64,000 bases of DNA from contig CM052827.1 in assembly GCA_028534125.1 (NCBI GenBank), positions 12,214,001 to 12,278,000 of the forward strand, written 5' to 3'. This DNA comes from Lama glama (lineage: Eukaryota). Under the pieces are notes generated by a model. That model ran no database searches and was not told the DNA's origin. It saw only the letters and a program-made list of their open reading frames with translations. The translations under genes and the position numbers were made by a program. Numbering within the stretch: the first letter of the stretch is position 1; every line of letters starts with the position of its first letter. Of the stretch, positions 28,660-62,068 are shown piece after piece.

Positions 28660-32665
<4,006 letters not shown>

Positions 32666-34537: not shown

Positions 34538-34581
<44 letters not shown>

Positions 34582-44074: not shown

Positions 44075-44620
44075 TTTTTTGCCACGTTATTTATTAAAGC
44101 AATCTCCGTGCGTCCTCACCCCCGGGGCAGGTGTGCGTTGAGGGTCCCAACCCTGCGGACGCACAGAGGGACGATGTCAGGCGCTGAAGTGTTGGGTCAT
44201 AGCCGGCACTACAAGCTCAGTGCTGTAGGAAGACGAGCTTAGAGAGATGGTGTGGGCTGCAATCCCCTAAAGGCAGCCTGTAGCGCAGGGAGCTGGGCTG
44301 GTAGCGCCCTCTGCCGATGTGAGTCGGACCCGGGGGTAGAAGAGGGAGGGGCCTCACCAGCTGTTGAAGCCCCAAGTCCAGCATGCTTGGGACACGTCGA
44401 CCAGGCTGGCACCCCGGTGTCCTCCAGGGAGTATCAGGTCATCCGTCGCAATTCGTTGTAGTCCCCAGAGGCTACGCGGAGGCGTCCTCGTAGCACTGGG
44501 GAGGCCCGCAAGGCCATGGCCCCCTTGGTCCCTACCAGCACCTGGAGCGTAGGGGACCTCGCCTAGCTTGCGACCACGCCTCCGCACAACTGGGTAGCAA
44601 GCTGCGTGGGGCGTCAGTTC
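44075..44620 (-). pseudogene. FCGBP-like last two exons (~44358-44620; 44075-44222) with polyA signal
   Basis: LQVLVGTKG...GRLRVASGDYN(1-nt frameshift)IATDDLILPGG...WGFNS-TG|GTGAGG. The acceptor cctacag| supplies C to complete Cys, then TELVVPAMTQHFSA*. AATAAA at 44090-44095. Confidence 0.75.
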
Positions 44621-44745
44621 CTTTGTGGAGAGCGGAGGCGGGTCAGGGGCTGGGATGAGGGCCGGAGTCCGGGAATCAAAGGGGAACTCAGAAACCGCTG
44701 TGAATCCCGCCCGCCCGTGTCTCTATCAGAAATGCATATTCATCT

Positions 44746-44895
44746 GGGGGGAGGGTATAGCTCAGTAGTAGAGTGTGTACCTAGCATTCATGAGGTCCTG
44801 GGTTCAATCTCCAGTACCTCCATTAAAACAAAACAAAACAAAACATAAACCTAATTACCTCTTGCCCCCAAAGAAATAGATTTTTAAAAAATAAT
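44746..44895 (+). mobile_element. tRNA-derived SINE (Vic-1-like)
   Basis: ggggagggtatagctcagtagtagag...gggttcaatctccagtacctcc...aacctaattacc. TSD aaatgcatattca at 44730-44742 and 44896-44908. Confidence 0.9.
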
Positions 44896-46135
44896 AAATG
44901 CATATTCAGGTCTTTGCTAGAGGAATAAGTTCTGAGATTTTCTTCAGAATCCTCCAACACAAACAAAACAAAAAGAGTGGGAGGAAAAGATGCCTTAAAG
45001 GAAGAATGGCAAAATATTTGTAACCATAATGGGGTTTCATAACACTATTCTCTCTTCTTTTGTGATGCTTGAAATTTTCTATAATGAACTCTTTCTTAAA
45101 AGGAAGCTTTAGAGAGAAAAAAAGCCTCTAGAATCTGTCATATCTCTCTCACCTGTGTCTTCATAATCTAATAACTATTTACTGAGCACATACTCTGTTC
45201 CAGGCACTATTCCAAGGGCTTTATAAATATTTATCTTATAATGTGTAACACAGTATGTCAACATAATATGCAATATAATAGAATGCAATTGATTTTTAAT
45301 ATATTGTCACGTAATTTATATTTTATGTAATACATTTATTTTAAAATAGTGACTATTTAAAGTAGTTTATTAAACATTTAATATTTTAAGTGATATTAAA
45401 TCCTCACCAACACTCTGACAATCTAGATCTGCAGCACCATATACCTTCTGCCTCCTAGGAAACTAGGGCCAGAAAAGTAACATAGCCTGCCTAGGTTTAC
45501 ATAGCTGGTAAGTGGCAGAGTCAGGTTTTCGAAACCTAGGGGTCTGACTTCATGTCGTGTGTTTTTAGCCACTCTGCTATCTATACTGCCTCTCCAAAAG
45601 ATAATATAAAAGTGGCTGCTAGAGCTATCACAGCTTATACTTATTGAGTACTTATGCCAAGCCTCTTACTTTATCTTCACAGCTACCCTATGCAGTGGAT
45701 AGTGTTATCACCACTTTTAGTGGATGAGGAAACAGGCATAGAGACTGAGTCACTTACCCAAAGTTACACTAGAATTCTAAGAAACATAGTCGGAGTCTCT
45801 TGACCCTCTAGCCAAAGGCTCTGGCTTAGCTTACCTGCTAGGTTGTGGCAGATACCGAAGCAGTTCTCTTGCTGGTCCATCCCCCCATTCCTACAAGTAG
45901 CCTTGAACTCACAGGTGATTCTATTTCTCATCAAGGGATTTCAAGTTTGTTTCCCCTTATAAATACTACCCATTTTGCCTGCCTGGATTCTAGTTCTTCT
46001 GTGGCTCTCCTGCTTCCGTGTTCCTTGGGGACCCAGGGGTCTCTACCCTGGCATCTTTCCCTGCTGGGTTTCCGACCTCTCCTAGTCTGGCTTCTTCCCA
46101 TTAGCACTTAAACATCCCCAAGTTTCTCCCATCTC

Positions 46136-46166
<31 letters not shown>
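46136..46166 (+). repeat. (CAA)n microsatellite
   Basis: About 10 perfect caa units. Confidence 0.95.
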
Positions 46167-46167
<1 letters not shown>

Positions 46168-46903
46168 ATCAGCTCTAAGATACGCTTGCCCTCTGCCTCT
46201 TCCTAACTGACTTTTTTCTCCCCTTTCTGCATAGACATCTTGTCAAGAGAGGGGTCTATGCCTGCTGTCTGTACTTGTCTCATTCCTCAGCCCTGCAGTC
46301 CAGGAGATGACCTCCTGATGTGATTTCTTAAATCACCAACAGCCTCCTTGGTCCTAACTCCACAGACATTTAGTGGGATATTTTATACTCATTAGTTGAT
46401 TTTTACTGCAGCCCCGAGTGTAGCATCTCCCTTTTTCTGGCCTTGCCTTACAGTTCTCCTCCTTGCTCTCTTCCCCAGTTTAATGTCAGGTCTCAGCTCA
46501 TTTGTTGTCTCCTTCAGAAGGCCTTCACTGATCCCCTAAACTGGAGGTACTGCCTCTGGGTTCCCACAGCCTGCCTATTCAAGCCCTGATCACTCCAACA
46601 TGTGCTGCCCCTATTATAGCTCTGGTCACTCAGTCAGTAGTTTCCAGGAGTTCAGCAGGTCTTGTGTCAAGGTGGGGTCAGTGGGTCCTGAGAAGTCCAG
46701 GGTGAGGTTTATGTGGGGTCTAGAGGGTCATGGGGGATCAGGGCAAGGACATTTAATCAGTGGAGGTCAATGTGAGATCAGAGGATTATGGGAGGACAGT
46801 TCTACATGAAAAGGTTATGGAAAGTCAGTGAGGGGTTAAGAGGCCCCTGAGATCAGTACTAGGCTACACAAAGGTCTTGGCTGGAATTGAGGTAGCCCTT
46901 TAC

Positions 46904-47895
46904 TCGCATTTCCCAGTTGGGTCCCACAGCTGCACAGCCATCCCTGAAGCTGATGATCATTTGTGGTTGGGGAGCAGTGCAGCCAGGACAAACTGGGAAG
47001 TCAGAAATTACATGGAACCAGTCAGGATCTTGGGGCCTAGAACCCACCAATGTGGCTAGCTCACAGGCACAGGGTATAATAGGCATGGGTGTGAGCACAC
47101 TGAAGCCATCAAAGGTGGTGAAGAGGCCCCCAGGTGCTAGGTAACACATGGCACCCTTCTCAGACTCACAGTGAAGGAGGATTAATAAAATGGCCACATT
47201 TAGGCTAACAGATTGCTTATTCTTATGCTTGCCCTTGAAACGGTCAACTGACCTGACTAACCGGTTGCTACTCACAGTTTCAGGCCCATTGTTAAAACTA
47301 AAGCTATTGATCTTACTATTTTTACGTTATTCTAGTAATCAAAAGCTATAATCATGATTGGCCTCTGGGTCAATCTCCAGGGAGAAGGTCACAGAACTGT
47401 AACCTTCCAAAGTAGGCTAAATACCAAGAAGACCACACCTTGAGTGCTTACGAGATAACGAGATCGAAAAAGTGACAACTGCTAGCCTCTATAGAATTGG
47501 TCACCTGGAGGCATCATGACGCCATTCTAAGTCTTCTGATGAGAAAATGATTCTTTTGATTGTTATTGATGCTTTATTGTTTGAGCCATGGCTATAAAAC
47601 CTACCCCATCCCCAAAGTGGGTTCACAGTTTTAAAGGCACTAGCCTGCTGTGAGTGCCTTTTGCCTGGCAAAGTAATAGAGCTACCTCTTTTCTTCTAAG
47701 CTCCAAGACCCGGTCCCTGAGTTATTTGGCTCATCAGGGATGGGGGCGGAACTTTCAGCAACAACAACACTGTACATCCCCACCCAGGATGCAGCCTATG
47801 CTTTGTGGGCAAGAAAAGGGCTGGCACTGAAGGCCTTGGCCATGTCAGCACATACAGCGCTCTTGGCAGCCAGGCCGGACCAATGCCTCCCCAAT
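46904..47895 (-). pseudogene. FCGBP-like exon: TILa plus first half of the terminal VWD, split by a solo LTR
   Basis: IGEALVRPGCQERCMC*HGQGLQCQPFSCPQSIGCILGGDVQC [LTR] CESEKGAMCYLAPGGLFTTFDG...DWFHVISDFPVC...IISFRDGCAAVGPNWEMR|GTAAAG. Resembles the last VWD of FCGBP. Confidence 0.88.
47172..47763 (+). mobile_element. Solo ERV LTR (~590 bp)
   Basis: TG...CA termini, TATAAAA at 47593, degenerate polyA signal at ~47674 and an imperfect 4-bp TSD (acag/acaa). Removing it restores the reading frame of the host exon. Confidence 0.85.
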
Positions 47896-49489
47896 CTGCA
47901 GAGACAAAGACTCAATATTGGGTCCAAAAAGCCGTCATAAACATGAATGGACAAACAATGAAGCACCTGTGTAGCACACATCACAGACAAAGGACTAATT
48001 TCCCTAAATACATGAAGAGTTCCTAGAAATCAAAAACAAAAAGACCAACAACACAATATTTTTTTCTCCTTTATCAACAATACAATATTTTTAAAATGGG
48101 CAAAGGCTATTCAGAAAGTTAATAAAAAAGGAAATAGAAATGTTTCTTAGATATATGAAAAGATGCTCAACTTCCTAATAAGACATACAAATTAAAAATC
48201 TATTGAGATATTTTGTGTGTCTATGCAGAACAGACAGCCCCAGCTGTAGGCTCGGAGGTAATGGCCACAAAAGAAGGACAGTGATTCCATAATTCTGTCC
48301 AGCTACAGAGAGGGCATGGGGGGTGGGAGAACAGCCAGGGAAGGGAGTATTGGCAGTCAGAAGACATTCTTGGAACTGTCAATGAAGGATCAGAGAGAGA
48401 TCAAGGAGAACATTCATTAGGGATCAAAAGAGAATTCAGTGGGAAGTCAATGGAGGCTAAATGGGGGGTCACCAAAGGATCCAATGGGGGATCAATGATA
48501 GAGTGACTGGATGGTCAGAATTAATGAGAGGTCAGTGGACAATCAATGAAGGTGGTAAAAAAAAAAAGAATGATTAGGGAGTCAGTGGGAAGAGTCAGTG
48601 AGGAATCAAAGGGAGGATCAAGAAGAGGGCAAATGGAGAAAGTGAAATGAGTCACTGAAGATCAAGAGAAGGCTTTGGGTGGAACTAGGGGTGCTGCTCA
48701 AGTGGAGGGTTAATGAGGGTGGAGTTAGAAAGTGAGTCGATGAATTAATGAGACACTATGAAAGGCTCAATGGATGAGATAATGAGTCAAAGAGGCTCAA
48801 CTGGGTAACAGAAAAGCTGAGAATTCAATGGAGGAGTCAGTATCAACAGGAAGCTCAATAGCAAGATCTACAGGGGTGTAAGTGGGGGCATTAATGGGCC
48901 AGTCATGGATCACTGGGAGTGTCAATAGATAGCTCAGCACAGATCAGTGGGGTAGGAGTGTGGGGTGGGGTCAACAGGGCAGTAAATAGGGTTAATGGGT
49001 GAGTCAATATAACAGTAGTAGGATCAGTTGGGGAGGGGCAATGGGTTAATGGGATATTAAAAGGGGGGTGAAAGAGAGGGTCAATGGGGAGGTCAGGGCT
49101 GAGCCGGTGGGTTAAAGAGGAGTCAATCAGGGAGTCAATGGAAGACTCAATGGAGAGTTAATGGGAGAGTAGTAGGAGTCTCAAGGGTGGTTAAGCATGA
49201 ACAAGTCAGAGTCAGTGGGAAGGAGTCGACAAGCAAGTCAGTGAGGAGGAGGGTCAGTAACCACCGGTAAGGGATAAATAGGGCCACTAGGGAATTGGAG
49301 TGGACACATTTGAGGACCAGTGGGAGAGTCAGTAAAAGAGGCATCAAAGGAAAAGAAGGGTCACTATGGGTTATCTGAGAATAGTGGGAGGGATGGTGGG
49401 TCAGTGTGGGACTTTGGAACCTCCCCTAGAAGTAGTTGCGATCTTTCAGACTCACATCTAGCCTCAGACCATAGGCTGAGGGGGTCAGG

Positions 49490-50034
49490 TCCTTGGGCAG
49501 CCACATGACCACAGAAGTGGGGTCAAATTGAGGCTGAAGGGCTCAAGGTTGGTGTGGGCTGTGTCACAGAGACCTGCCAGGTGGTAGACGCAGGAGCCAG
49601 GGAGTTCACAGTGGGCTCCTCCAAATGTGTGGAAGTGGAAGTCTCCAGTGGCAGTGCAGACCAGTGGTTCCTCCAGGGTGGTGGTGCTGGGTGGGGGCTG
49701 GGCTAATAGGTAGTGATGCCAGCCACCTGTGGCAGCCTTGCAGCGACCACAGCCCTTCTCAGGCCAGCACCCGGTAGACTGCTCACCAGGGCCCCAGGGG
49801 CTGGGCAGTGGCGGTTCTGAATACAGCTGTCTGTCCAGAAAGTGCAGCATTGGTGCAGGAAGCAGGAGCAGTGGCACGGAGCACACATCAACCCTCCAGC
49901 AGCGAAGAGCAGGCAGGCACTGGCAGCTAGGGGCACAGGGGTGGCCACAGTGCTCTGGGGCTGAGGGGTTGGCACATGTGGCTGGATGTGCAGAGACACA
50001 TGGGAAAAAGCAGGAGTTTGTCAGGCACTGGGGA
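49490..50034 (-). pseudogene. FCGBP-like exon: TIL-TILa plus start of a VWD (3' end truncated or unclear)
   Basis: PQCLTNSCFFPCVSAHPATCANPSAPEHCGHPCAPSCQC; TFWTDSC; CTATGDFHFHTFGGAHCELPGSCVYHLAGLC. The phase-2 acceptor matches the upstream donor. Confidence 0.85.
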
Positions 50035-50227
50035 CTGGGACCAAGGACTAATGATGGGGAACCAGCAGTGGGGCCACAGGCCTCAGGGCAGGGGCCAAGG
50101 TGGCTGAGGGGGAGAATGAGGGTCAGGGACCTATTAGTTGCAGGAGTCTGGGTCACCAGTCCCCTCCTTCCCAAGACCCAGAGGTCATGCCTCTATCTCT
50201 GACCCCTCAGACCACAACCCTGCTCAC

Positions 50228-50680
50228 CTTGCAGTAGAGCCTAGGAGTCCATCTGTGATGCCACAGACTTCCTCCGTAAGGCAGCTGAAGGGGACACAAG
50301 CCAGGTGCCCTCCAGGGCTGCACACTGGCACCAGCCGTCTGGCAGGCGGCCACACAGGCTTGCAGGCAGGCCACAGAGCACTTTGTGGTTCCTGAGGGCA
50401 CAGCCCATTTTGACCACAGAGGTCTGGAAGATGGGCTCCAGCAGCAGGCATGCGTGGCAGGGCGCCAGCAGGCCGCTGGGCTCACACGGGAGGCCACAGG
50501 TGCTGTGTCTGGGCTCTTGTCCTCAGTGGCTGCTGGACAGCTGGCATCTGGGCAGGGATGCAGTGCAGGCCAAGGCCTCGGCTGCTGCAGGTTATCTGTT
50601 GAAGTCGCCACAGAGGCTGTGCAACCGCCCCTGTCAGCGCAAGGACAGGCAGCCGAAGGTCAGTGGTGGGGGTCAGGGAC
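50228..50680 (-). pseudogene. FCGBP-like exon: VWD tail, then C8 fused to a TILa end
   Basis: QGRLHSLCGDFN; CGLPCEPSGLLAPCHACL; LQACVAACQTAGASVQPWR; CSPGGHLACVPFSCLTEEVCGITDGLLG. Phase-2 donor AG|GTGAGC. Confidence 0.85.
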
Positions 50681-51619
50681 TGGGGAGAATCAAGGAGAAG
50701 AGGGGTTGGCAGTGGTGTGGGGAGTGAGTGCGGAGGCTAAGAGAGGTGGTGTGCTGGAACAGGGGGAGAGTGGAGAGGGAGGGGAAGAGGGAGAGGAGGG
50801 ATGTGGGGGTGAAGTAAAGGGGGAGAGGGAGTCAAGGCGGAAGGGGCAATCACAGCAGCACTTGGGAGTGGGTACTGAAGAGTAGGAAGAAGACCAGGAA
50901 AGGTGTGGGAGGAGGTGTGTGGAGGTTAGGAGAGGGGAAGGAAAATGAGGTGAGGCGAGTGGTGGGGTGGGCACGGGGGTGTAAGGTGAGAAGGAGTATT
51001 CCTATTTGGAGACAAAGGAGAGACCTAGAGGGCATCTGTGGACCTGGGGGATCAGGAGGCGGCAATGGAGGGTTGGAGAGCCAGGGAAGAGGTGGGAGGA
51101 GATGTTGGGACAGGAGGAGGGGAGAGGATGCGAGGCAGGAGGAAGGGCAGAGGTGAGAGAGGGGCATGCAGGGAAGGAAGGTGGGCAAGCAGGGACTGGG
51201 GTTGGGGATGCCAGGTGGGAGTTGGGGAAGAGGTAACGGTAATCATGGAGCATGGAGGGCACCCGGAGACCCAGGCAGAGGAAAAGAGACCTGGAGATGA
51301 AGATGTGGGGGGTGGGAGAGACAGGTGGGGTGGGCATACTGGGGTGAAGAGAAGTGGGGGAGGGAAGTGGGAGAGACAGAGAGCCTGGGCAGTATGGAGA
51401 AGGGACATGTGGACCCAGCTATTGGGAGAGGGGCTGAAAGGAGAAGGGGAAGGAAGAGAGGGAGGAGGAGGTGGAGAATAGAGAAGGAAGAAGGAAAAGA
51501 GAGTGGAAATGAGGGTGATGGGGGGAGGAAGGCCTCAGTGGGGGGTAGGCAGAGATTGGACCATCAGTAAGAGACTGGATGGCAGCTGAAAGGAGGCAAA
51601 GGAGGGGGCGGGATCTCAC

Positions 51620-52097
51620 CTTGACACATCCCTGGTCCAGGAGGAAGCGGTGGAGCAGCACGCGGTGGATTTCAGGCATCCATGAGCCATTTTCCAGCAC
51701 TACCTTGAAGGGCCACGTACCCAAAGGCAACATTTCTGTGTGCCCACCAATGAATAGGTGCAGGCGTTGGGGAGGTGGAAGGTGGTGCTCTCGAAAGTGC
51801 GGTAATGGAGCCTGCCTGGGGCGAGGCAGAGATCAGGGGCCACCCATCCTGCTCGGCACGGTTTGCAGGCCATCTGGCCGCCAGGTGGCAGCGGCAGCAG
51901 CGGCTGTGTGCGGAGTGAAGGGCGGGCAGCGGCGCCGGCGCAGCTCAGCACGAAGCCCGCTTCGCACACGCAGCCCTCGCAGCCCTGGAGGCAGCGCCCG
52001 CGATCCTCGCAGCCGGGTGGCCGCTCCTGTCCTGCGATAGTGTCTGGGCAGCTCCGAGCACACAGTGTGTAGTGTGAGTGTGTGCGGCAAAGCAAGC
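51620..52097 (-). pseudogene. FCGBP-like exon: TIL plus first half of a VWD
   Basis: CRTHSHYTLCARSCPDT...CLQGCEGCVCEAGFVLS (TIL); CLAPGRLHYRTFESTTFHLPNACTYSL, then a frameshift to PFKVVLEN...K|GTGAGA. Confidence 0.88.
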
Positions 52098-52669
52098 CTG
52101 CGAGGAGTAGGAATGGAGGGTTACTTGATGGCAAGTGGCTGCTGGAGTCTCACCCTCACCTCTGGGGCTGGGCTGTGGCATCTGGGGCCTTGCAAGGGTA
52201 AGGGATGGAAAGCTTGACTTGGGCAGAGCTGAAGCTAACTTTGCAATGGGTAAAGAAAGACCAGGTAGCCAACCATGAATCAGAAGCACAGTTAATCCCT
52301 AAGGGTTTGGGATGGGTAAGGGTTTGGGGGCTGGACCATGAACAGGTCTGAGTTTCTGAAGAGGTAAGGGTTGACGGGCTGGACCATAATCAGGGCTAAG
52401 AAGTAGGAAGGATAAGAGCCAGGGGAAGGACTTTCGTCTGAGTTGGGCTGACACTTTTGGACGGGCAAAGTATGAGGTCCCCGACCATGACAGGGAGTGG
52501 AGAAGTGGTTGGAGGCTGGCACCGTGGGAAGTATGGGTCTCAAGGACTAAATTGTGTGTGGCGGGTGGGAGGTGGGGAGACTGGCACCCTAAGATGGGCA
52601 ACAAGGAGCTGAACTGGGGTCAGGAGTGGGTCAGAGAGGAGAGGCTGGACCGAAGCCCTGGACACTCAC

Positions 52670-53030
52670 TGCACAGGCTCAATTTCTGCCAGGGGAAGAC
52701 CTGGCTGCCCAGCAGCTGGCAAGTTTCACGGTAGACACTTAGCATCTAGCAGGTTACAGTGCCCAGGCATATATCCACCATGCAATCTTGGACAGAGGGG
52801 TTTGGGGCAAGCAGTTTACAGCACAGTCAGAAGGGCCCCAGTGTGGCCAAGAGGATGTCACATATGTAGACAAAGTGGGCTGGGGTGCTGGTGGTTGGCA
52901 GGGTGACAGAGGATGGTAGCAGTGGCAGCATCTTGCCAGCAGCATCCAGGTACCCAGCGCGGGAACCCACCAAGAAACTACGGCCAAAGGCCCAGGCCAA
53001 TGCATCCTCAGGCAGCTTGGTGCCCCCTAG
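52670..53030 (-). pseudogene. FCGBP-like exon remnant: VWD tail plus C8
   Basis: AFGRSFLV...CDILLATLGPF*LC..LLAPNPSVQDCMVDICLG..C*MLSVYRETCQLLGSQVFPWQKLSLC. Stops at 52827-52829 and 52746-52748; phase-1 GTGAGT donor. Confidence 0.85.
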
Positions 53031-53533
53031 AGTGGAGGCTTTGCAGCCCCAGCAATCCTCACCTCACATAGTAAAGTTTCTGTCCTCAGAAACCGGAAGT
53101 CCCTTCTCCAGAACATAAAAGTCAGGCCATGGGACATGAAACTCTCACTGCAGACCCTGGAGTCTTCACTGCCTAGAGGACTTTTCCATCCACCAAATCT
53201 AGGAATCTTGCCTTTTAGAACTGCGTAATTCCGGACCCCAGAAACTATGTCTTCACTTTCAGGACCCACAGACTCCAACTCCAAGACCCAGGTGTTCCAG
53301 TCCTCAGAACCCAGAAGCCCCACCCCTAGGGTGGAGGAGCCTCCATCCTCAGACCCAAGAAGCCCTGGCTCCAGAGCCTCAGCAGTCCCATCCCTAAGGC
53401 CCGAGGCCATCCCACCCCAGGGACCCTGAGCTTTGCCCCAGGAATCAACTCTAGTATCAAGGAATGTCCCCTCTAGTTTCCAGAGTCCCTTTCACCAGCA
53501 GCCCATAGCCCTTTACTTCTAAGGCTCACTCAA

Positions 53534-54102
53534 GGCAACCAGCTGGGAATTTCCAGGGATGGACGCTGATACCCAGGTGCTGACAAGCAGGCATATAGAC
53601 CTGGAGGGCCACACAAAGCCCAAGTTGGTAGTTGGGGAAGAGATAGATCGACAGATCCAAGCACTGCAGCTGGACACAAAGAGTGTAGGCTGCAGCAGAT
53701 AATCGCAGTGGCCTGATGACCTGTTCAGAGCTCCTAGGACAGCACAGGGCCCTGGGGTCTCTGTTTGGGGTGCAGGCTGGGCACAGGAAGCAGCCCAGAG
53801 GGTGTGGCATGGGGTAGCAGGTGGCTGCAGGGCCCAATTGCACAAGAAGACGCGAGGCTTGGGACCTCCCACATCTTCGGGAGTTTCCCAGTTGAAGTTC
53901 CCACACAGGCCTGCCATTTGTGCACGTTAGCTGCTGGTCATTTGCAGAGACCACACGTGCTGCCAGTCGGCGACGAGGCACAGTTTGGGTGGCTCTTGTT
54001 CCAGATCTGCCTCTGCTCATAATTTGGAGCTGCGAGGGTACAACCACAGCTGCCCATCACTCAGGGTCACTGGCTGCCACAGCCACTGCTGGGCAGGGCG
54101 AC
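53534..54102 (-). pseudogene. FCGBP-like exon: second half of VWD1 plus C8
   Basis: PVTLSDGQLWLY...DWQH...SS*RAQMAGLCGNFN...LCVALQVYMPACQHLGISVHPWKFPAGC. In-frame stops at 54017-54019 and 53927-53929, plus a frameshift. The donor reads TTGAGT. Confidence 0.88.
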
Positions 54103-56401
54103 CTAAGAGCCAGAGTCACCAGAAAGGCTGCATTCCTAAGCATTTGAGGAGGGGTGAGGGTTGGAAGCTGAGGGGGTTGAATGTTGGGGTACTGATTGAG
54201 TGGGGGCTTCAAGGTCTCATTCTCAGCCACTAACCAAGAGTCTTGTTTCCACACCCAGATGTGTCCTCACACAAAACTCAAAAGTCTTTCTCTGAGGAAT
54301 CCAGATAAGTTATTTTCACTAAGGAGCTACGACTGCCCACTTCCTCCAGTTCATAGGAGAGCCTTCAGCCAGAACTCAAATGTCTTTCCCACAATTACCA
54401 AGAGCCTCTGCTAAGAGCTTCCAAATCAGAGAGTATCTCCCTTCTTCCAATCCATGATTTCCTTTTTTAATCCTCTATCCCCCAGAAGGTTTCCAACCCA
54501 CCTTTTAGTCTCCCTCACTGCCTCCATCCTGGCCCGACCCCCATCATCTCCTGCCAGGACTACTGCAGCAAACCTCCTCACTGTTCTCCCAGCACTTCCT
54601 TCACAAGCTCCAGAGTCTGTTCCCCACATGGCAGCCACAAGGACCTTATTCACATGCAAGTGATAGTTCATCCCTCCCCTGCACAAAATCTTTCCTTGGC
54701 TCCCACCTCACAAAGAATAAAAGCTAAAGTTGCTGTGAGAGCCCACATGGCCATACACAATCTGACCCCCATGATCTCTCCCTTTTCTCGGCACCATGAT
54801 CCCTCCACTTCAGCCTGGACTTCTTGCTGTTCCTGTAATGTCCCTGGCAGATTTTCACTTTAGGCACTTGCTGTTCCCTCTGCCTGGAATGCTCTTTTCT
54901 CAGATACCCACACGGCCCTCTCCCTCACTTCCTTTAAGACTTGGCTTAAGTTTCATCTTCTCAGCGAGGCCCTCCTATTTAAAACTGTACTCTCAGAAAT
55001 CCTGATCCCACTTTCCTTGCTCTATTTTTTCTCTTTAGCACGTATCATCTTCTAACATACTATAAAATTAACTTAAATGTGTGGCTTATCTCTCGCCGCT
55101 AGAATATAAGCACTGGAAGAACAAGGATTTTGTCTGCCTTGGTTGCTGATGTGCCTTCCGTTTCTTGAACAAGGTCTGATACACAATAATTAAAAATATT
55201 CCTCAATTAATGAGGGAACTCAGGAGTGTCAGGTCCCTGGGAGATGGGGGCCCATGTGGTGAGAGTAAAAATCTGGAGCCCTGAGAATTTGAGGATGCTG
55301 GAGACCTGGAGTGGAGGCTGAAGGATGCTGAGGAACCACTAGAGCACTTGGGGGAAATCCTGACTCCTGAGTGTCAGGGCGAGCTCTCAAGGGGTGTGGA
55401 GGGGAGTATGGACCATCATGGGCTCCCACAGCAAGTCAGAATCATACACTTTCTGAGCTTTCCATGTATTCTCATTTTTGTCCTCAATACAGCCCTATGG
55501 AGTAGGTCTTTACATCATTCTGATTTCACAGATGAAGAAACGGAGGCTCAGAGAGGTTAAATCATCTGCCTAAAGTCATACAAATAACAAGTAGTCAAGT
55601 TGGGATTGCACCCATGCCATATGGGTCCAGAGTCTGTTGTCCTTCTATAGTGCTGAAAGGTGGCTTTGCTACATCCGTAACCTCCATGAGTTTTCCCCCT
55701 CTAGCAACTCTGATTAAATATAGTCTAGCCCCCACAACCTTCCATCCAGAGCACTGTCCCTAAATCTTCCCTGAAGAAAAATGTGGGACATACCCGACAT
55801 ACCCGTGACTGCATATGGTCCGAGGATATGTCCAAAGCTCAGAGAATTTGGAGGCTCCAGATGCCAGTGTTAGGGGGCAATAAACATAGCAAACATCCCT
55901 CACATGGCACTTACCATGAAATGGACTCTGTTCCAAGTGCTTTTCATATATTAACTCATTCCCACCTTACAGCGACCTGACGAGGTGGGTGCTAGAGATC
56001 CATAATCCCTTAACTACAATCCCCCAATGCAAAACTGGTCTGAAGACAGAAAGATGTTTTGTGTGTTTGATGTTAAAACTAACTTGGCAGCGAAAGCTGA
56101 CCTGAACTTATGAGTGGCTGCTTACTGTCTTAACTTATTCCACTCAGTATGAATATTCAGACATGTCACTGCAGAGATATTAATATTTGTTATTTTTAAC
56201 ACCCACTAGGAGTATGATATAAAATACGTGGCATTTGCATGATATGACCATTTGAAATTCCAAAATCTGAAATGCACTTGGCCCCAGTCATTTTAGATAA
56301 AGGACGGTGGACCTGCATAATTGCCTCCATTTCTGAGATGACAAAACTGTGGGACAGAGAAGGATAGGGCTTCCCAGGATTCCATACAGTATGATTCTTA
56401 C

Positions 56402-57400
56402 CAGAACAAAGCAGAACTCATGTTTGACTGTAGTGATGGTAATGCCAAAGATGTGCCTTGTGACAAAGCATGGGCTGTCTCCCTCCAGAGTAGGCAACCC
56501 ACAGTTGGAAGGCAGGGAGGCCACTGGTTAGGGTCTGAGGGTGCAGCCCCAAGGCATGGGGAAAGAGTAGCCATCAAAAGTGTAGATGTATGGTAACCCA
56601 GAGGCCCAAAACTTACCCCTTGTGATGGACCCCTGCCCATTAGAGACAGTTGCTATCTCTGATTTGCACAGGTATCATTTTGGACCCAAACACAGTTTCA
56701 AGTTCTGGTTTCTCCACTGCCACAGCCTCTGAGCTTGGCTCAGTCACTGGCACCACCTTGAGCCCCAGCTTGGCCACTGAGGCAATTTCTGACTGAGATC
56801 AAGACACTGTCTTGGATTTGGGCTCTGGTTCAGCTGAGCATGGGCAGGGAGACAAGTGCAGGTGCTGGTTCAACTACAGCTAACAGATTTAGGCCAGGGT
56901 TCACTCACAGCCCCTGAGAAAGCCCCAGATAAGCTGCAGCCACAGGTAAAAAAAAAAGCCCTGGTTTAGCTTCATGTATGCTCTCTGATCCTGGTTTGAC
57001 CATTACCATAGTTTTAGCTCTGGACGCTGTTTTGGAGTCCTTTAGAGATACTGTCTTGGAACTGGACATGGTCTTGGATCCAGATGTGTCCTGAGTGCTG
57101 TGCATACACTTAGCTTTGTGCTTTACAAGGTGACTTGTGGTCCCATCAGAGCATGCATAGTCTTTACAGGAGAATGGAACTGGAGGGGCATCATCACGGA
57201 AGATTCTAGGCATCATTAGGGAAGATTCTAGGAAGGAATGGGATTCCATGGGAGGGTCCACAGCCGTCTCAGAACACCTGGAGATGAGTGGAGAGGATGC
57301 AGCAGAACTGAATCCTGGCATTTAATTTCATCCCTGACCTGCCTTCACACCCTAAGCATCCAGGGTCCCTGGCATTGAAGCCTCAACATTCAGAAGCTAA
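56402..57400 (-). pseudogene. FCGBP-like exon: S/T/K/E-rich repetitive stalk plus first half of VWD1 (5' boundary approximate)
   Basis: Degenerate SKTVS/KPGSE/KPELE units run into WASGLPYIYTFDGYSFPMPWGCT and IFGITITTVKHEFCFVL|GTAAGA, typical of a VWD first-half exon. Confidence 0.75.
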
Positions 57401-57650
57401 CAGCATTCCCAATCTAAAATGAATTGGGGTCCGTATCAGCAGAAAGAGAAGGGTGGGGCTGAGGGGCAATACAGAAATGATCAGCACAGCCTGGGTGTAT
57501 AATAGGACTTTGATAAGCCAGTGAGAACGCTTCCTCTAAAGACAGCTATACCAATTATTTAAAAGTATCTGTGCTAGTAAGTCCAAACACATCTGTAAGT
57601 TGATTTTGGCCAGTGAAGACTTCCACCTTGTCATGTTAAGCAGCCTTAAG

Positions 57651-57652
<2 letters not shown>

Positions 57653-57692
<40 letters not shown>
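57653..57692 (+). repeat. (GT)n microsatellite
   Basis: About 20 GT units. Confidence 0.95.
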
Positions 57693-57695
<3 letters not shown>

Positions 57696-59299
57696 CACTC
57701 TTTGGGGGAGGGATTGGAAATATATATCCTCCCTAATTCCTAGGGAGAGGAGTTATTTTTCATAATTGTTGGTGCATGAAGTTAGCCATCTACAAAGTAA
57801 ACTTGAAAGAAATTTTTTGTTCTATAGGATTTTGTATATTTTCCATCAAGATGAAATATAGAGTTTTGGTGTGGATTAGAATGGGAGCTTAAGTATCAGC
57901 TCCTCAGGGTAGGGATGTGGTCTATGTTGTTCATTGCATTTCCAGTGCCTAGAACAGGCCTGGCCTGAGGGAACTATTTTTAAAACTTATTGAAAAATAA
58001 TGGCAAATATTTACTGCATGCCAGACGCTGTTCTATTAACTCATCTTTTAATAGGCCACGAAAACCTTATGATGTTGTTGGTATTATTACTCACACTTCA
58101 CAGAGGAGAAACTAGAGGGTTTGAGAAGTGAAGTGACCTGCCCAGAAGCACACAGCTTGTTGCAAGATTTTAATTCAAGCCTCTTGGCTCCGGAGTCCAG
58201 CTCTGAGCCATTATGAATAAATGACTTGAAGTATGTATCTTCGTTTCTAAAATACCCTAGCCTCTCTGAGTATTCCCTCACGCTTCTCTCATCTCCCTGG
58301 TCTCCTGCTGTTTTTTCGGAACTGGAAGATATTGGATGGGAGCCCCCTGATTGCAGGGTTTCGGGGAAATCCAGAGTGCCTTGGCACAATTCAGGACCAT
58401 GGTCAGCGCCCAGTTACCATTTACACTGAGTCTGCGCGGAGCGCAGCGCTCACTGTGGCGATACGCCTCTTTGGAGCAGCCTGAGAGAATGGGGATCGCG
58501 GCTGCCACACTCTCCGTGTGTAGATTTGGGAAGTGATTTTGCCACTTCAACCTTCAACTGCTCCCTCTATAAAATGCGGATTTTATAAAAATCTGCCTCC
58601 ACGGTGGCTACGAGGAATACATTACATAATGTACATGCATTATATATATATAATTATATAAGCACTTAACTCATAAATCTTGACTATAAGTGTTTGTGAG
58701 GCAGTACAAAAAGCAAACAAAACAAGAAGACGGTTAAACAACTTGTGCGCTGGAAGTAAGTGTACCAGGGTTCAAATCCTGACTCTGCTCCTTTCTAGCT
58801 TGGCAAAAGATTTGAGTTCCAGCCCTTCCCCTTCCTTTCTCCAGGAGAAAAAAAGGAGGGGAATTATTATATTATTATAGAGTCTACCCTAAAGGCTAGG
58901 AGGAAGGTTAAGCATTCAATGTTAACTTTGTTATTTTATCCCTCTCTCCCCATCGTTCACATTTTACACTGTAATAAAGAAAAAGAGCATGTGACCATCA
59001 GCAATAACTTTCCCTTGAGCCCAGTGCCTGGTATAAAAATAATGTGGCACACATTTAATAAATCATAGTTATTATTATTCATTCCATAAATACTTACGGA
59101 GTGCTGGGCACTATCATAGGTGCTAGTGATTCAATGGTGAACAAAACACTTTTGCAAAAATCTGACCACTTGAAGCTATTTGGGGTGACAGAAATATTCT
59201 ATAACTTGATCTAGGTGATGGTTACACGGGTGTGTATCTATATGGGAATATTAATCAGGCAGGTTACTTTAAGATTGTGCTTAAATTAAGCCTTACTTT

Positions 59300-59460
59300 T
59301 TGTTGTTGATTTTTGTTTGTTTTTGTGGGGGAGGGAGGTAATTAGGTGTATGTATGTATATATGTATGTATGTATGTATTTAATGGAGGTACTGGGAATG
59401 AACCCAGGACCTCATGAATGCTAGGTACACACTCTACTACTGAGCTATACCCTCCCCCCT
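59300..59460 (-). mobile_element. tRNA-derived SINE (Vic-1-like)
   Basis: Reverse complement of the same family. TSD ttaag(c/g)cttacttt at 59286-59299 and 59461-59474. Confidence 0.9.
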
Positions 59461-59985
59461 TTAAGGCTTACTTTAAAAAAATTGTTCTCAAGGAACTAAT
59501 GTGTAGCAGAGAGAGAAAATAAGTTAAGAATAAAGAAAGTGATATGCTTTATGGAAAAAAAAAGCAGGGAGGGGCAAAAGATTGTAGGGCTTGGAGAGTT
59601 GCTATTTTAAACTGGGTGGCCAGGTTGGCCTCAGTAAGAAGATTCAATTGAGTAAACAATTGAAGGAGGTGAGGGAGTGACACAAAAGTATATTATGGGG
59701 ACAGCCAGTGCAAAGGCCCTGGAGCAGGGAGAAAAGAGTAAGGTGGCCAGTGTGGCTGCAGTCAGGGAGGATAAGAGAGGACATGAGATCAGAAAGGTAA
59801 TGGGAGCAGGTCGTATGGGGCCTTACAAAACACTGTAAGGACTTTTGTTTTTTACTGGGAGTGAGGTGGAATGATTGCATGGGGGGGACGTGACTTGGCA
59901 TTTTAAAACTGTCTCTTTGGCTGCTAGTCGAGCAATCCAATGTAGTGCTATGATTTTCGAGCCTCATCCCCTGAAATCCCATTAC

Positions 59986-61296
59986 CTGTCCACCGCCTCT
60001 CTTGGGCCCCAGAGCTGGTCACCCGCTGCCGGGAACCCCGCGGCTTGGGTGCGGAAGCCAGAGCCGTGGGCGGTGCTGGAGCTGAACTACGCCCGCCGCG
60101 TCTCCTGGCTGTGCACGGCATCGCGCCCGCGCCTGGGCCCATAGGCCAACTCGGTAACTCGGTCGAGGCGAAGCTCTGAGCCAAGACTTGCTTTGGCCAG
60201 AATACTGCCCGGGATGAGGCTCAGGACCAGCAGGAATGAGACTCCAGTGCGAGCTGGGCAGCGACTGCTGACTGAAGAAGCCTGGCAGCGCCTCGAGCGC
60301 GAAGCTCAGTCTGAATGCGCCCACTGGGAGCATGAGCGCAAAAAAAGGATTGTAGGTGACGCCCCGCAGGCGGTGGCTGCAGCCAGGAAAGTACCTGCTG
60401 GCGGGCGGGGAAGCTCAGCACTAGCGGGCGCACCGGATCCACGTCCAAGCGCAGCAAGGCGCCAGGGCTCAGAGCCTGCGCTCTTTTCGGGGCTGCCCCC
60501 CGCGGCCAACAAACGCAGGCCACCGGGACCGAGAACCGCCAAGTACACAAGGTCTCCGGGCCCGGGATCCAGGAGGCGCGAATGGAAGCACGGCGTAGAC
60601 ATGGCCCCAGCGACTCTGGGGCAGCAGCTGTTCGTACACGTGGCCACAGGCTTTGTCTCCGCTTGCCGGCAACTGTGATCAGCTAGGAGCGCGACGGGAT
60701 GAGTGGCCATGACGTGGGTGCCCCACACGTCTCCTGAGTTCTAACCCCCTCTGTGCCTGGAAGGGCTCAAGGTGTACGAGGAGGGGCCGGCGGGCAGCGT
60801 GCTCGGGGCCGTCCAGTGGGACCGGCACCGGAGATCTGAGACGCAGGCACATGGGCCCAGCGCCGGGCACCACGGCAAACTCCTTGTGCCCGTCGTGGGG
60901 CTGCAGAGACGGCGTCACAACCACGTATAGAGGACCCAGCGGGCGGTGCGGAAGAGCCAGGGAGAATCTCAAGAGGCTCGCTCACCACCACAGTCACTCC
61001 CACCGGCCGCCACGCGCTGCCCGCCGCCCGCCCCGAGCCCCGCAGTTCCACAGCGCGGGGCAGGCTCACGGACGCACTGGCGCTTGGCCGCAGGCTCAGC
61101 GCGCGCCGGAAGGGCGGCGCCCCCACCGGGGGGCGCTCTCACTAGCACTGCCCTCGCTGGGCGGAGTGGGGGCCCTTGGGCGGTGGCGACACGTACGGCC
61201 GGAAGTGGGGCTTCTCAGTGCTGGACTTCTCTAAGAAAGCCGTGATGAAGTAATGGCCCTGGAAACTCATAAACGCAGCCACTGGGCTTGAGGGAT
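59986..61296 (-). pseudogene. FCGBP-like exon 2: IgGFc-binding N-terminal domain, multiply frameshifted
   Basis: Motifs in the expected order but in different frames: GHYFITAFLE; SASVSLPRAVELRGS; LGPLYVVVTP..KEFAVVPG; PVALLADHSC; CGHVYEQLLPQSRWGHVYAV; DLVYLAV. Acceptor ttcccag| before 61296; donor ACAG|GTAATG at 59986. Confidence 0.9.
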
Positions 61297-61804
61297 CTGG
61301 GAAGAGGGAGGAAAGAGTCAGCATAATCCTGTGGATTTTGAGGCCAAATAAATCAGGTTTTAATTCTGACTGCCACTCCCCGGCCATTTGAACATGCGCA
61401 AGGTATTTAACTTATTTGGGCCTCAGTTGCCTCATTTGTAAGAGGAGTTCTTAGCGCACATTCCACAGGGCTAATGGGAAGATTAGATGAGATAATATAC
61501 GTAAAGGCTATGGAACAGTGTCTGGTATATAAATATCAGCTTAAAATACAGTCGTTCCATTGGGCTACCGTCCCAGAAAGGTGTGACTGGCCCCCTTCCT
61601 ACAAGTAGTTTGGCCAATCCCTCTCCACAGAGTCTGCCCAAATAGTCCCTTGTCCCAGCTGGCCAGGGCCCTGTCCCTAGAAGCTCCACTGTGGCCAATT
61701 CCAGAATTTGCCAGGCAGCCCCCCAACCCTAGCCAGCACAACCAGGCCCTGCTGCAGACCCAGACCAGATCACCAGCCTACTGGGTCTCCCATGGATCCC
61801 TCAC

Positions 61805-61859
61805 CCCGTAGGAAACTCAGGGCCCCCAGGCACAGCAGGGCCGGTGTGACGGCAGCCAT
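61805..61859 (-). pseudogene. FCGBP-like exon 1: signal peptide MAAVTPALLCLGALSFLR, phase-1 donor
   Basis: Kozak GCCATGG, hydrophobic leader and G|GTGAGG donor. Phase matches the exon 2 acceptor at 61296 (G+AT = Asp). Confidence 0.75.
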
Positions 61860-62061
61860 GGCTGGAGAGAGAAGGGATGGATCCAGGCTAGTCAGTGCAG
61901 TCTCTCCCCCAAGTCTGCCCTCCAGCCCTCCTACTGCAGGAGCAGAAGGGGACACAAAAGGAATTCCAGAGAAAGGCTTGGGCCTCAGAGCCAGGGGAAA
62001 AGGCAAGGTTGGGGGTCTCACTTGCCAGGAGCTAGACTAAGGCCAGGCATATTGTGGGGGC

Positions 62062-62068
62062 ATTTATA
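62062..62068 (-). promoter_or_regulatory. Candidate TATA box of the FCGBP-like gene
   Basis: TATAAAT on the minus strand, ~200 bp upstream of the signal-peptide ATG. Confidence 0.45.

What the first reader, a model, noticed from the sequence alone, without database searches (positions are those of the whole stretch)
44075..62068. Fossil of a second FCGBP-family mucus/IgGFc-binding gene next to SDHAF1
Seen: about 11 colinear minus-strand exon remnants encode signal peptide > IgGFc-binding domain > repetitive stalk > VWD-C8 > C8 > TIL-VWD-C8 > TIL-TILa-VWD > TILa-terminal VWD > short tail > AATAAA. Several junctions have matching splice phases, and stops and frameshifts scatter the homology across many short ORFs. 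Known: this architecture, including a last VWD with no C8 and a split Cys codon before a tiny last exon, is FCGBP-like. Human FCGBP lies several Mb away, near FBL/PSMC4, not beside SDHAF1. Inference: this is a distinct, diverged paralog that arose by genomic duplication and died in this lineage. It may be intact and poorly described in other mammals.
Basis: partly seen in the sequence, partly recalled or inferred. Interest (0 to 1): 0.85.

Follow-up and report, generated by a model that had tools for sequence, protein, structure and literature searches.

The report
Dead FCGBP-like mucus gene beside SDHAF1
Next to SDHAF1, this camelid genome carries the wreck of a second FCGBP-type mucus-protein gene that still looks intact in dogs, seals, mustelids and marsupials; it is an ordinary gene loss, but it points to an unstudied paralog.

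Summary
On the minus strand, 13 colinear blocks from 61859 to 44180 match the 2905-aa grey-seal "IgGFc-binding protein-like" protein over residues 1-2905. The blocks run signal peptide, IgGFc_binding domain, Ser/Pro/Glu/Thr-rich linker, VWD/C8/TIL/TILa units, terminal VWD, tail exon, stop, AATAAA.

A frameshift-aware alignment gives 1726 aligned residues at 64.5% identity, with 24 frameshifts and 12 in-frame stops. About 1000 ancestral codons are missing.

A tree puts the fossil in a 100/100 clade with carnivore FCGBP-like proteins, and then with marsupial ones. True FCGBP, including camel FCGBP, forms a separate clade. So this is a distinct old paralog, not a displaced FCGBP.

Contigs from other sequencing runs reproduce 4.7 kb of it with no indels, so the breaks are not assembly errors. 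RNA contigs from a relative about 3.5% divergent share at least 10 of 11 frameshifts there. They also show a GT..AG splice, so the wreck is old and still transcribed.

The intact paralog has no GDPH self-cleavage motifs and carries an extra linker.

This is an ordinary unitary pseudogene of a known family.

The parts
61803..61859 (-). Exon 1 remnant: start codon and signal peptide (MAAVTPALLCLGALSFLRG)
   Evidence: 15 of 19 residues identical to the ferret and jackal FCGBP-like N-termini, E 2e-5 to 4e-5; open, with no disablement.
60027..61285 (-). Large exon remnant encoding the IgGFc_binding (FCGBP_N) domain; 8 frameshifts and 3 stops
   Evidence: Matches seal residues 20-454 at 64% identity. 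Pfam IgGFc_binding scores 26.8 bits, above the cut-off, in piece 60472-60678. tblastn E 4e-74.
56399..57315 (-). Ser/Pro/Glu/Ala/Thr-rich linker ('stalk') and start of VWD1; 4 frameshifts and 2 stops
   Evidence: Matches seal residues 444-753 at 59% identity. The linker is present in FCGBP-like proteins but absent from cat and camel FCGBP, where VWD1 starts at about residue 471.
53535..54091 (-). End of VWD1 (…GLCGNFN…) and C8-1; 1 frameshift and 2 stops
   Evidence: Matches seal residues 755-937 at 58% identity. Pfam C8 is above its cut-off. The frameshift at 53649 is shared with the divergent relative's RNA contigs.
52668..53024 (-). C8-2 remnant; 2 stops. The TIL and VWD2 that should precede it (seal 938-1214) are missing
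   Evidence: Matches seal residues 1215-1333 at 71% identity. Only about 510 bases lie between this block and the previous one, yet the missing part is present in the dunnart.
51619..52098 (-). TIL, truncated TILa and start of VWD3; 3 frameshifts. The exon ends are defined by RNA contigs
   Evidence: Pfam TIL scores 26.9 bits. Matches seal residues 1335-1508 at 63% identity. RNA contigs in X17 and X18 end at 52098 (preceded by AG) and at 51619 (followed by GT).
50630..51618 (-). Intron, purine-rich on the + strand, spliced out in RNA. The exon for seal residues 1509-1574 is missing here
   Evidence: A joint from 51619 to 50629 skips 989 bases with ends CT..AC on the + strand, which is GT..AG on the minus strand. 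It is seen in two RNA runs. GC skew is +0.35.
50225..50629 (-). End of VWD3, C8-3 and a TILa piece; 3 frameshifts and an internal loss of the TIL (seal 1696-1771). The exon ends are defined by RNA contigs
   Evidence: Matches seal residues 1575-1695 at 63% identity and residues 1772-1800 at 72% in another frame. Pfam gives C8 at 20.3 bits and TILa at 17.3 bits, both below their cut-offs. A GT donor follows 50225.
49512..50104 (-). TIL-TILa and start of VWD4 (…TGDFHFHTFGG…); 4 frameshifts and 1 stop
   Evidence: Matches seal residues 1805-2006 at 69% identity. Pfam VWD scores 25.0 bits, above its cut-off. This piece was the query of the phmmer search, E 1.3e-48.
48216..48302 (-). Small piece of VWD4. 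Seal residues 2065-2659 that should follow (rest of VWD4, C8, TIL, VWD5, C8, TIL) are missing
   Evidence: Matches seal residues 2036-2064 at 59% identity. Only about 315 bases separate it from the next block, yet the missing part is present in the dunnart.
47764..47901 (-). Last TILa remnant; 1 stop
   Evidence: Matches seal residues 2660-2705 at 76% identity.
46895..47170 (-). First half of the terminal VWD (the one without a C8); still open
   Evidence: Matches seal residues 2705-2796 at 72% identity with no stop or frameshift.
44360..44613 (-). Second half of the terminal VWD; 1 frameshift and 1 stop. It ends with the first two bases of a split Cys codon
   Evidence: Matches seal residues 2797-2889 at 69% identity. 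The sequence reads ...AACAGCTG|gtgagg.
44177..44222 (-). Tiny last exon (C)TELVVPAMTQHFSA plus the stop codon
   Evidence: Matches the seal C-terminus CTEKLVMPAVTQHFTA.
44090..44095 (-). AATAAA polyadenylation signal
   Evidence: Read directly from the sequence.
43388..43741 (-). SDHAF1 coding sequence, the intact neighbour just downstream on the same strand
   Evidence: 118 aa, 95% identical to Camelus SDHAF1, with Pfam LYR-motif families (Complex1_LYR type; PF05347, PF13232) on its homologs.

Best explanation
This is a unitary pseudogene. It is the decayed, in-place remnant of an FCGBP-like paralog, the gene that RefSeq pipelines call 'IgGFc-binding protein-like'. SDHAF1 identity indicates that the genome is a camelid other than Camelus. 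The ancestral gene encoded a secreted protein of about 2900 aa. Its layout was signal peptide, FCGBP_N/IgGFc_binding domain, a Ser/Pro/Glu/Thr-rich linker of about 220 aa, five VWD-C8-TIL(-TILa) assemblies, a terminal VWD without C8 and a short tail. By analogy with FCGBP it would be a disulfide-rich component of mucus or saliva; this is an inference. Unlike FCGBP it has no GDPH motif, so it should not undergo the autocatalytic Asp-Pro cleavage typical of FCGBP; this is also an inference. In this lineage the gene stopped coding long ago. It has 24 frameshifts and 12 stops, and about 1000 codons are gone. Decay began before the split from a relative that is about 3.5% divergent. The locus is still transcribed and spliced in that relative, with skipped exons, and no frame stays open through the RNA-defined exon 52098-51619. 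That RNA is therefore most likely non-coding.
For: Domain and homology evidence:
- Pfam domains exceed their cut-offs in separate stop-free pieces.
- The best hits among 1.8 billion proteins are carnivore 'IgGFc-binding protein-like' proteins.
- The colinear match to seal, ferret and walrus proteins lies on the minus strand only.
- Summed tblastn score is 1600 bits at 52.5% identity for seal FCGBP-like, against about 320 bits at 30-32% for cat, camel and elephant FCGBP.
- In the tree the fossil joins carnivore FCGBP-like at 100/100 and marsupial FCGBP-like at 100/100. True FCGBP is a separate 100/100 clade that includes camel.

Evidence that the gene is dead:
- The frameshift-aware alignment gives 13 blocks, 1726 aa, 64.5% identity, 24 frameshifts and 12 stops.
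- The missing segments are present in the dunnart, so they are losses in this lineage.
- Only 70 of 94 aligned cysteines are kept here, against 94-100% between intact orthologs.
- A 7176-base contig of run X4 spans 49400-54100 with 2 substitutions and no indel. Contigs of organism B show 3 substitutions and no indel.

Evidence on age and transcription:
- RNA contigs from a relative about 3.5% divergent show no indel at 10 of the 11 frameshift sites in that stretch.
- The same contigs show a GT..AG joint 51619|50629 in two runs and links on to about 56403 and about 44538.
- The wild camel model EPY81234.1 (341 aa, no Pfam domain) is built on the same fossil at 87-90% identity.

Evidence on the intact paralog:
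- It has no GDPH motif and carries a linker.

Indirect evidence for synteny:
- Wolverine FCGBP-like pieces VCX15588 and VCX15589 lie in N-to-C order on a 156,687-base contig, and wolverine SDHAF1 is VCX15591.
- Walrus FCGBP-like and walrus SDHAF1 each lie on a scaffold of 4,388,953 bases.
- Sea otter FCGBP-like and sea otter SDHAF1 each lie on a scaffold of 9,304,990 bases.
Against:
- An intact second copy elsewhere in this genome was not excluded by a whole-genome search. The evidence is only that no camelid full-length FCGBP-like protein appeared in the searches, which are limited by length and by shared words.
- The reads evidence consists of assembled contigs, not raw reads. The tool warns that X4 might be this DNA's own source.
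- The fossil's row in the tree was aligned by projection onto the seal protein, which favours seal-like placement.
- Some of the 24 'frameshifts' may be alignment choices.
- The RNA comes from one study and from a relative, not from this species.
Confidence: 0.9

Rival explanations
1. The gene is alive and the stops and frameshifts are assembly or consensus errors.
For: A few blocks are still open: 46895-47170, 48216-48302, exon 1 and the tail. The N-terminal exon is GC-rich, which can give sequencing errors.
Against: There are 36 disablements, and about 1000 codons are missing. Identity to orthologs is only 64.5%, and a quarter of the aligned cysteines are lost. Contigs from other samples and from a second organism label reproduce 4.7 kb without any indel. 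A relative about 3.5% divergent shares at least 10 of 11 frameshifts. The camel gene model on this locus has no domain.
Confidence: 0.01
2. It is the true FCGBP ortholog, moved next to SDHAF1 and then broken.
For: It has the same domain family and the same N-terminal domain. In camel, FCGBP and SDHAF1 lie on the same chromosome-sized contig.
Against: The tree separates the two clades at 100/100. The tblastn score to FCGBP is one fifth of that to FCGBP-like. Camel keeps a full 3002-aa FCGBP with 5 GDPH motifs, whereas the fossil's VWD starts carry none and it has the FCGBP-like linker.
Confidence: 0.01
3. It is a duplicated, non-unitary pseudogene, and a working FCGBP-like copy survives elsewhere in this genome.
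For: The rest of the genome was not searched. VWD genes do duplicate often.
Against: The fossil has the full exon-intron layout, its own first exon and its own polyA signal. It sits where indirect evidence places the live gene in wolverine, walrus and sea otter. No camelid full-length FCGBP-like protein turned up, although three Camelus genomes are annotated.
Confidence: 0.05
4. The wreck has been reused, either as a spliced long non-coding RNA or as a short residual protein with a role in the reproductive tract. This does not exclude the pseudogene reading.
For: Spliced RNA contigs with a canonical GT..AG joint occur in two RNA-Seq runs labelled reproductive system, at higher word depth on exons (about 17) than on introns (about 4-5). 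A 341-aa model was predicted in camel.
Against: Contigs cannot give RNA level or strand, and intronic coverage suggests pre-mRNA or DNA carry-over. The exons evolve like the introns, at about 3.5% in both. No frame is open through exon 52098-51619. The camel model has no Pfam domain. Transcription of old pseudogenes from a surviving promoter is common, by general knowledge.
Confidence: 0.1

Closest known systems
RefSeq/UniProt 'IgGFc-binding protein-like' models of Caniformia and marsupials, e.g. grey seal XP_035923990.1 (2905 aa), black-footed ferret XP_059237595.1 (2897 aa), fur seal XP_073741243.1 and fat-tailed dunnart XP_074162790.1 (3065 aa)
   Same: They form one clade with the fossil at 100/100. 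Block order is the same from the signal peptide to the tail, and so are the linker, the terminal VWD without C8 and the C-terminal tail sequence. Identity over 1726 aa is 64.5%.
   Different: Those models are full-length predicted proteins that keep 94-100% of their cysteines. The window copy has 24 frameshifts and 12 stops, and four segments of about 1000 codons in all are missing.
FCGBP (IgG Fc-binding protein), the goblet-cell mucus protein of human and mouse
   Same: It has the same building plan of an N-terminal IgGFc_binding/FCGBP_N domain followed by repeated VWD-C8-TIL(-TILa) units and a terminal VWD (PMC4948705). It is a secreted, disulfide-rich protein.
   Different: It is only 30-35% identical and forms a separate clade. 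Cat and camel FCGBP carry 5 GDPH self-cleavage motifs, and all GDPH sites are cleaved in secreted FCGBP (PMC8267560; PMC10880436). The FCGBP-like proteins and the fossil have none. FCGBP lacks the linker of about 220 aa.
Rodent Fcgbpl1 (9530053A07Rik)
   Same: It is named as an FCGBP-like gene and appears only in expression lists.
   Different: From memory it sits beside Fcgbp, not beside Sdhaf1, so it may be a different duplicate.
Zonadhesin, alpha-tectorin, otogelin and the gel-forming mucins
   Same: They share VWD-C8-TIL units (PMC4948705).
   Different: They lack the IgGFc_binding N-terminal domain and have MAM, NIDO/ZP, AbfB or PTS/CK domains instead (PMC4948705). None of those domains was found here.

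Membership tests
FCGBP family in the broad sense (FCGBP_N domain plus VWD-C8-TIL repeats) | N-terminal IgGFc_binding (PF17517) domain | tested here: met
   26.8 bits against a cut-off of 25.6 in piece 60472-60678. 64% identity to seal residues 20-454.
FCGBP family in the broad sense (FCGBP_N domain plus VWD-C8-TIL repeats) | Several VWD, C8 and TIL/TILa domains in series after it | tested here: met
   VWD, C8 and TIL are above their cut-offs in separate pieces. TILa is weak. The order is colinear with the seal protein.
FCGBP family in the broad sense (FCGBP_N domain plus VWD-C8-TIL repeats) | Open reading frame able to make the protein | tested here: not met
   24 frameshifts, 12 stops and about 1000 codons missing. 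It is a pseudogene of the family, not a working member.
True FCGBP orthologs | Groups with FCGBP of other mammals in a tree | tested here: not met
   It lies outside the 100/100 FCGBP clade that holds camel, dolphin, cat, bat, elephant and others.
True FCGBP orthologs | GDPH autocleavage motif at the start of most VWD domains | tested here: not met
   The fossil's VWD starts read GLPYIYTFDG, GRLHYRTFES, GDFHFHTFGG and GGLFTTFDG. The intact FCGBP-like proteins have 0 GDPH motifs against 5 in cat and camel FCGBP.
FCGBP-like ('IgGFc-binding protein-like') orthologs of carnivores and marsupials | Same clade and highest similarity | tested here: met
   100/100 support. 1600 bits against 320 bits for FCGBP.
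FCGBP-like ('IgGFc-binding protein-like') orthologs of carnivores and marsupials | Ser/Pro/Glu/Thr-rich linker between the N-terminal domain and VWD1 | tested here: met
   Window 57315-56700 aligns to the seal linker. The linker is absent from FCGBP.
FCGBP-like ('IgGFc-binding protein-like') orthologs of carnivores and marsupials | Same genomic place (next to SDHAF1) in species with the intact gene | tested here: inconclusive
   Support is indirect only: consecutive wolverine accessions VCX15588/89 and VCX15591 in the expected order, and equal scaffold lengths for both genes in walrus and sea otter.
Unitary pseudogene | Disablements are real, not assembly errors | tested here: met
   Contigs from other runs and from a second organism label show no indels over 4.7 kb, and the frameshifts are shared with a divergent relative. 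These are contigs, not raw reads.
Unitary pseudogene | No working copy elsewhere in the same genome | not testable with these tools
   Only this window is available. No camelid full-length FCGBP-like protein turned up, which is weak negative evidence.
Processed (retrocopied) pseudogene | No introns, and a polyA tract at the end | tested here: not met
   The 13 blocks are spread over 17.7 kb with introns, and one intron is confirmed by RNA.

The most novel reading that the evidence does not exclude
The FCGBP-like gene is an old therian protein of mucus or saliva that works without the GDPH self-cleavage typical of FCGBP. It has been kept in caniform carnivores and marsupials and lost independently in several placental lineages (camelids, and probably rhinoceros). 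In camelids its wreck has been kept as a spliced, regulated non-coding RNA in the reproductive tract.
Probability: 0.12. Interest if true: 0.5.

Novelty: new member of a known kind. Interest (0 to 1): 0.35.

Why it matters
The pseudogene is one more lineage-specific gene loss and changes little by itself. Its value is as a pointer. Therian mammals had two FCGBP-type genes, and the second is known only from automatic annotation.

That second gene differs from FCGBP in two ways that bear on mechanism. It has no GDPH cleavage sites, and it has an extra flexible linker. One peptide of it was reported in dog saliva (PMC6279226). Mucus biology is built on human and mouse, so a paralog that some lineages kept and others lost offers a natural experiment on what this protein class does.

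The case also shows that junk protein models, such as the camel EPY81234.1 and probably the rhino KAF5924289.1, have been built on such wrecks and now sit in protein databases.

Tried and rejected
- **Contig look-up for synteny.** The direct check of synteny in carnivore and marsupial genomes could therefore not be run, and no other tool was used to get around this.
- **Pfam scans with no result.** Pfam found nothing relevant in many other stop-free pieces, including 60682-60981, 56531-56674 and 46862-47326. These pieces nevertheless align well to the seal protein, so single short pieces are simply too weak for Pfam.
- **Earlier findings.** The search of earlier findings returned only this same finding.
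- **Papers.** Searches for FCGBP with SDHAF1 or pseudogene, and for Fcgbpl1, found no description of this locus. Lang et al. 2016 do not mention a second mammalian paralog.
- **Repeats and RNA families.** Tandem Repeats Finder found only a (GT)20 repeat. Rfam found only two tRNA-like SINE heads.
- **Dating the loss.** The density of stops and frameshifts gives anything from about 25 to over 60 million years, depending on the mutation rate assumed, so I give no date.
- No human sequence was fetched or compared. The N runs at 9691-9871 and 9976-10108 were left alone.

Full report
**What the window is.** SDHAF1 is intact at 43388-43741 on the minus strand. It is 95% identical to Camelus SDHAF1 and 85% or less to other mammals. 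Its own database record is masked and sits on a 77.9-Mb contig. I take the genome to be a camelid other than Camelus; this is an inference. The window has two N runs, at 9691-9871 and 9976-10108, far from the finding. They were left alone.

**Checking the observation.**
- Stop-free minus-strand pieces hit Pfam models above the curated cut-offs on their own: IgGFc_binding at 60472-60678 (26.8 bits), C8 at 53529-54056, TIL at 51703-52149 and VWD at 49488-50192. Weaker C8 and TILa hits lie at 50.2-50.6 kb.
- phmmer with the 235-aa piece 49488-50192 against 1.84 billion representative proteins gave 40 hits. The best was a walrus 'IgGFc-binding protein-like' at E 1.3e-48.
- tblastn with the full-length grey seal (P0055, 2905 aa), black-footed ferret (P0049) and walrus (P0041) proteins against the window gives hits only between 61285 and 44360, all on the minus strand. 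They are colinear from residue 20 to 2889 and the reading frame keeps switching.
- Short-query searches add exon 1 at 61859-61803 (MAAVTPALLCLGALSFLRG, 15 of 19 residues shared with ferret and jackal). They also add the last exon, (C)TELVVPAMTQHFSA followed by a stop.
- The Cys codon is split as TG|gtgagg…ctacag|C, and AATAAA lies at 44095-44090.

**How broken it is.** I aligned the seal protein to each block with a frameshift-aware dynamic programme. The result is 13 blocks, 1726 aligned residues and 64.5% identity, with 24 frameshifts and 12 in-frame stops. The N-terminal exon alone has 8 frameshifts and 3 stops. Four seal segments have no counterpart: 938-1214, 1509-1574, 1696-1771 and 2065-2659. 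The space left for the two largest is about 510 and about 315 bases. All four are present in the marsupial ortholog, so they are losses here and not carnivore gains. In the tblastn projection, only 70 of 94 aligned seal cysteines are still Cys. Seal and ferret share 99% of cysteines, and seal and dunnart share 94%. A few blocks remain open: exon 1, 48216-48302, 46895-47170 and the tail.

**Whether the breaks are assembly errors.** Twenty runs hold the 49400-54100 stretch or part of it. I laid contigs of four runs on it.
- Run X4 spans the whole stretch in one 7176-base contig, with 2 substitutions and no indel.
- Run X16 carries another organism label and covers almost all of the stretch, with 3 substitutions and no indel.
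- These are assembled contigs, not raw reads, and the tool warns that X4 may be the source sample. Even so, 36 disablements plus large deletions cannot be consensus errors.

**A divergent relative shares the damage, and the locus is transcribed.**
- Two RNA-Seq runs labelled reproductive system (X17 and X18, from one study) give contigs that differ from the window by about 3.5% (109 of about 3110 bases).
- This fits the 87-90% protein identity of the wild camel model EPY81234.1 (P0003) to the same exons.
- Across the exons in the laid stretch these contigs show only two single-base indel differences, at 51836 and at 52801 (the latter in X18 only).
- At least 10 of the window's 11 frameshifts there are therefore shared. 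The gene was dead before the two lineages split.
- Both runs contain a joint 51619|50629 that skips 989 bases with CT..AC ends on the + strand. On the gene's strand this is a canonical GT..AG intron.
- The contig's loose ends map to about 56403 and about 44538. The splice-site contexts fit: cag|G at 52098 and AAG|gtgagc at 50225. The RNA thus joins …56.4 kb | 52098-51619 | 50629-50225 | 44.5 kb… and skips several old exons.
- No frame stays open through 52098-51619.
- Intronic parts are also covered at lower word depth, so pre-mRNA or DNA carry-over is present. Contigs give no strand or expression level.

**Which gene it was.**
- A search with the N-terminal 460 residues of the seal protein finds pinniped and canid 'IgGFc-binding protein-like' proteins at 90-100% identity and a dunnart protein at 52%. 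True FCGBP of cat, camel, dolphins, elephant, bat and others reaches only 31-35%, and turtle proteins 33%.
- A search with the dunnart protein adds a second marsupial at 67%.
- Summed tblastn scores on the window are 1600 bits for seal FCGBP-like, 758 for dunnart FCGBP-like and about 320 for cat, camel and elephant FCGBP.
- A maximum-likelihood tree of the N-terminal region (19 rows, LG+C20) puts the fossil in a 100/100 clade with the carnivore proteins. That clade joins the marsupial proteins at 100/100. True FCGBP is a separate 100/100 clade that includes camel FCGBP.
- The fossil's end branch is about ten times longer than those of the carnivores (0.76 against about 0.07), as expected for neutral decay.
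- One caveat: the fossil's row was placed by projection on the seal alignment.

So the locus is not a displaced FCGBP. It is a second, old paralog, at least as old as the split of placentals and marsupials.

**What the intact gene looks like.** Pfam finds one IgGFc_binding domain in each protein. Seal and ferret have 6 VWD, 5 C8, 6 TIL and 4 TILa domains, and the dunnart has 7 VWD. Two features set it apart from FCGBP.
- It has no GDPH motif in any VWD, whereas cat and camel FCGBP have five. In FCGBP all GDPH sites are cleaved autocatalytically and the cut is thought to stabilise the domain (PMC8267560, PMC10880436).
- It has a linker of about 220 residues, rich in Ser, Pro, Glu, Ala and Thr, between the N-terminal domain and VWD1. 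In FCGBP, VWD1 follows at once.

The peptide VAGLCGNFNRDPADDVDGPDPR was reported for 'IgGFc-binding protein-like' in dog saliva (PMC6279226). It occurs exactly in the jackal protein, and its counterpart in the window reads MAGLCGNFNWETPEDVGGPKPR. This is a single, low-scoring peptide, so it is weak evidence that the protein is secreted in saliva. That the protein acts as a disulfide-linked mucus component like FCGBP is an inference from the shared architecture (PMC4948705, PMC11796319).

**Synteny.** Three indirect lines remain.
- In the wolverine annotation, two FCGBP-like pieces are VCX15588.1 (seal 1415-1605) and VCX15589.1 (seal 1948-2099), on a 156,687-base contig. SDHAF1 is VCX15591.1. 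This is the same order and direction as in the window.
- In walrus, both genes are on a scaffold of 4,388,953 bases.
- In sea otter, both genes are on a scaffold of 9,304,990 bases.

This fits the window's arrangement but does not prove adjacency.

**Other lineages.** The camel model has no Pfam domain. The black rhinoceros model KAF5924289.1 has only partial domains and is 43-60% identical to seal. Both look like models built on wrecks; this is an inference. A 62-aa dolphin fragment is 84% identical to seal residues 2602-2662, so the state of the gene in cetaceans is open.

**Other strand and surroundings.** The plus-strand ORFs over the GC-rich N-terminal exon have no support. Rfam finds only two tRNA-like SINE heads, both in introns.

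**Comparison with what is known.** The locus belongs to the FCGBP family by domains and to the FCGBP-like ortholog group by tree, linker and colinearity. It fails the tests for true FCGBP and it is not a working gene. I found no paper on this paralog or on this locus. Its relation to rodent Fcgbpl1 was not tested.

**Verdict.** It is a unitary pseudogene of a known family, so novelty is modest. The more interesting point is the unstudied live paralog it reveals.

Noticed in passing
window 44751-44822 (+) and 59384-59454 (-): Two tRNA-like Rfam hits (34 bits each) sit in copies of one repeat whose translation recurs (…GGGYSSVVECVPSIHEVLGS…). They are most likely tRNA-derived SINE insertions in introns of the fossil.
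   Followed up: partly
window 48400-49400 and 50650-51600: Long purine-rich (+ strand) low-complexity tracts with GC skew about +0.35 and AT skew about +0.23. On the minus strand they give long Pro/Ser/Leu/Thr-rich pseudo-ORFs that could be mistaken for a mucin PTS domain. The second tract is an intron that is spliced out in RNA. Tandem Repeats Finder does not call them.
   Followed up: partly
window 57653-57692: A perfect (GT)20 microsatellite lies in the intron upstream of the linker exon.
   Followed up: no
P0003 (Camelus ferus EPY81234.1) and P0006 (Diceros bicornis KAF5924289.1): These public 'hypothetical protein' models appear to be stitched from exons of this same dead gene. The camel model has no Pfam domain and the rhino model only partial ones, so they are likely annotation artefacts in protein databases.
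   Followed up: partly
P0044, P0045 and P0054 (Mustela putorius furo): The domestic ferret annotation splits the FCGBP-like gene into three models (seal residues 19-1692, 1692-2211 and 2449-2903), and one of them is named plain 'IgGFc-binding protein'. Canid models are short (2170 aa with 4 VWD; dog 714 aa). Names and lengths in this family are unreliable.
   Followed up: partly
window 53404-53422 / 53814-53831 and 50777-50799 / 51439-51456: Small contigs of the DNA runs touch these places for only 18-23 bases and then run on into unrelated sequence. They are probably short repeats shared with other loci, not rearrangements.
   Followed up: no
window 19197-19736, 30970-31377 and 34293-35651: ORF fragments here look like ankyrin-repeat CLIP3, ALKBH6 and SYNE4 exons, which would fit the usual gene order beside SDHAF1. 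They were recognised by eye only and not tested.
   Followed up: no
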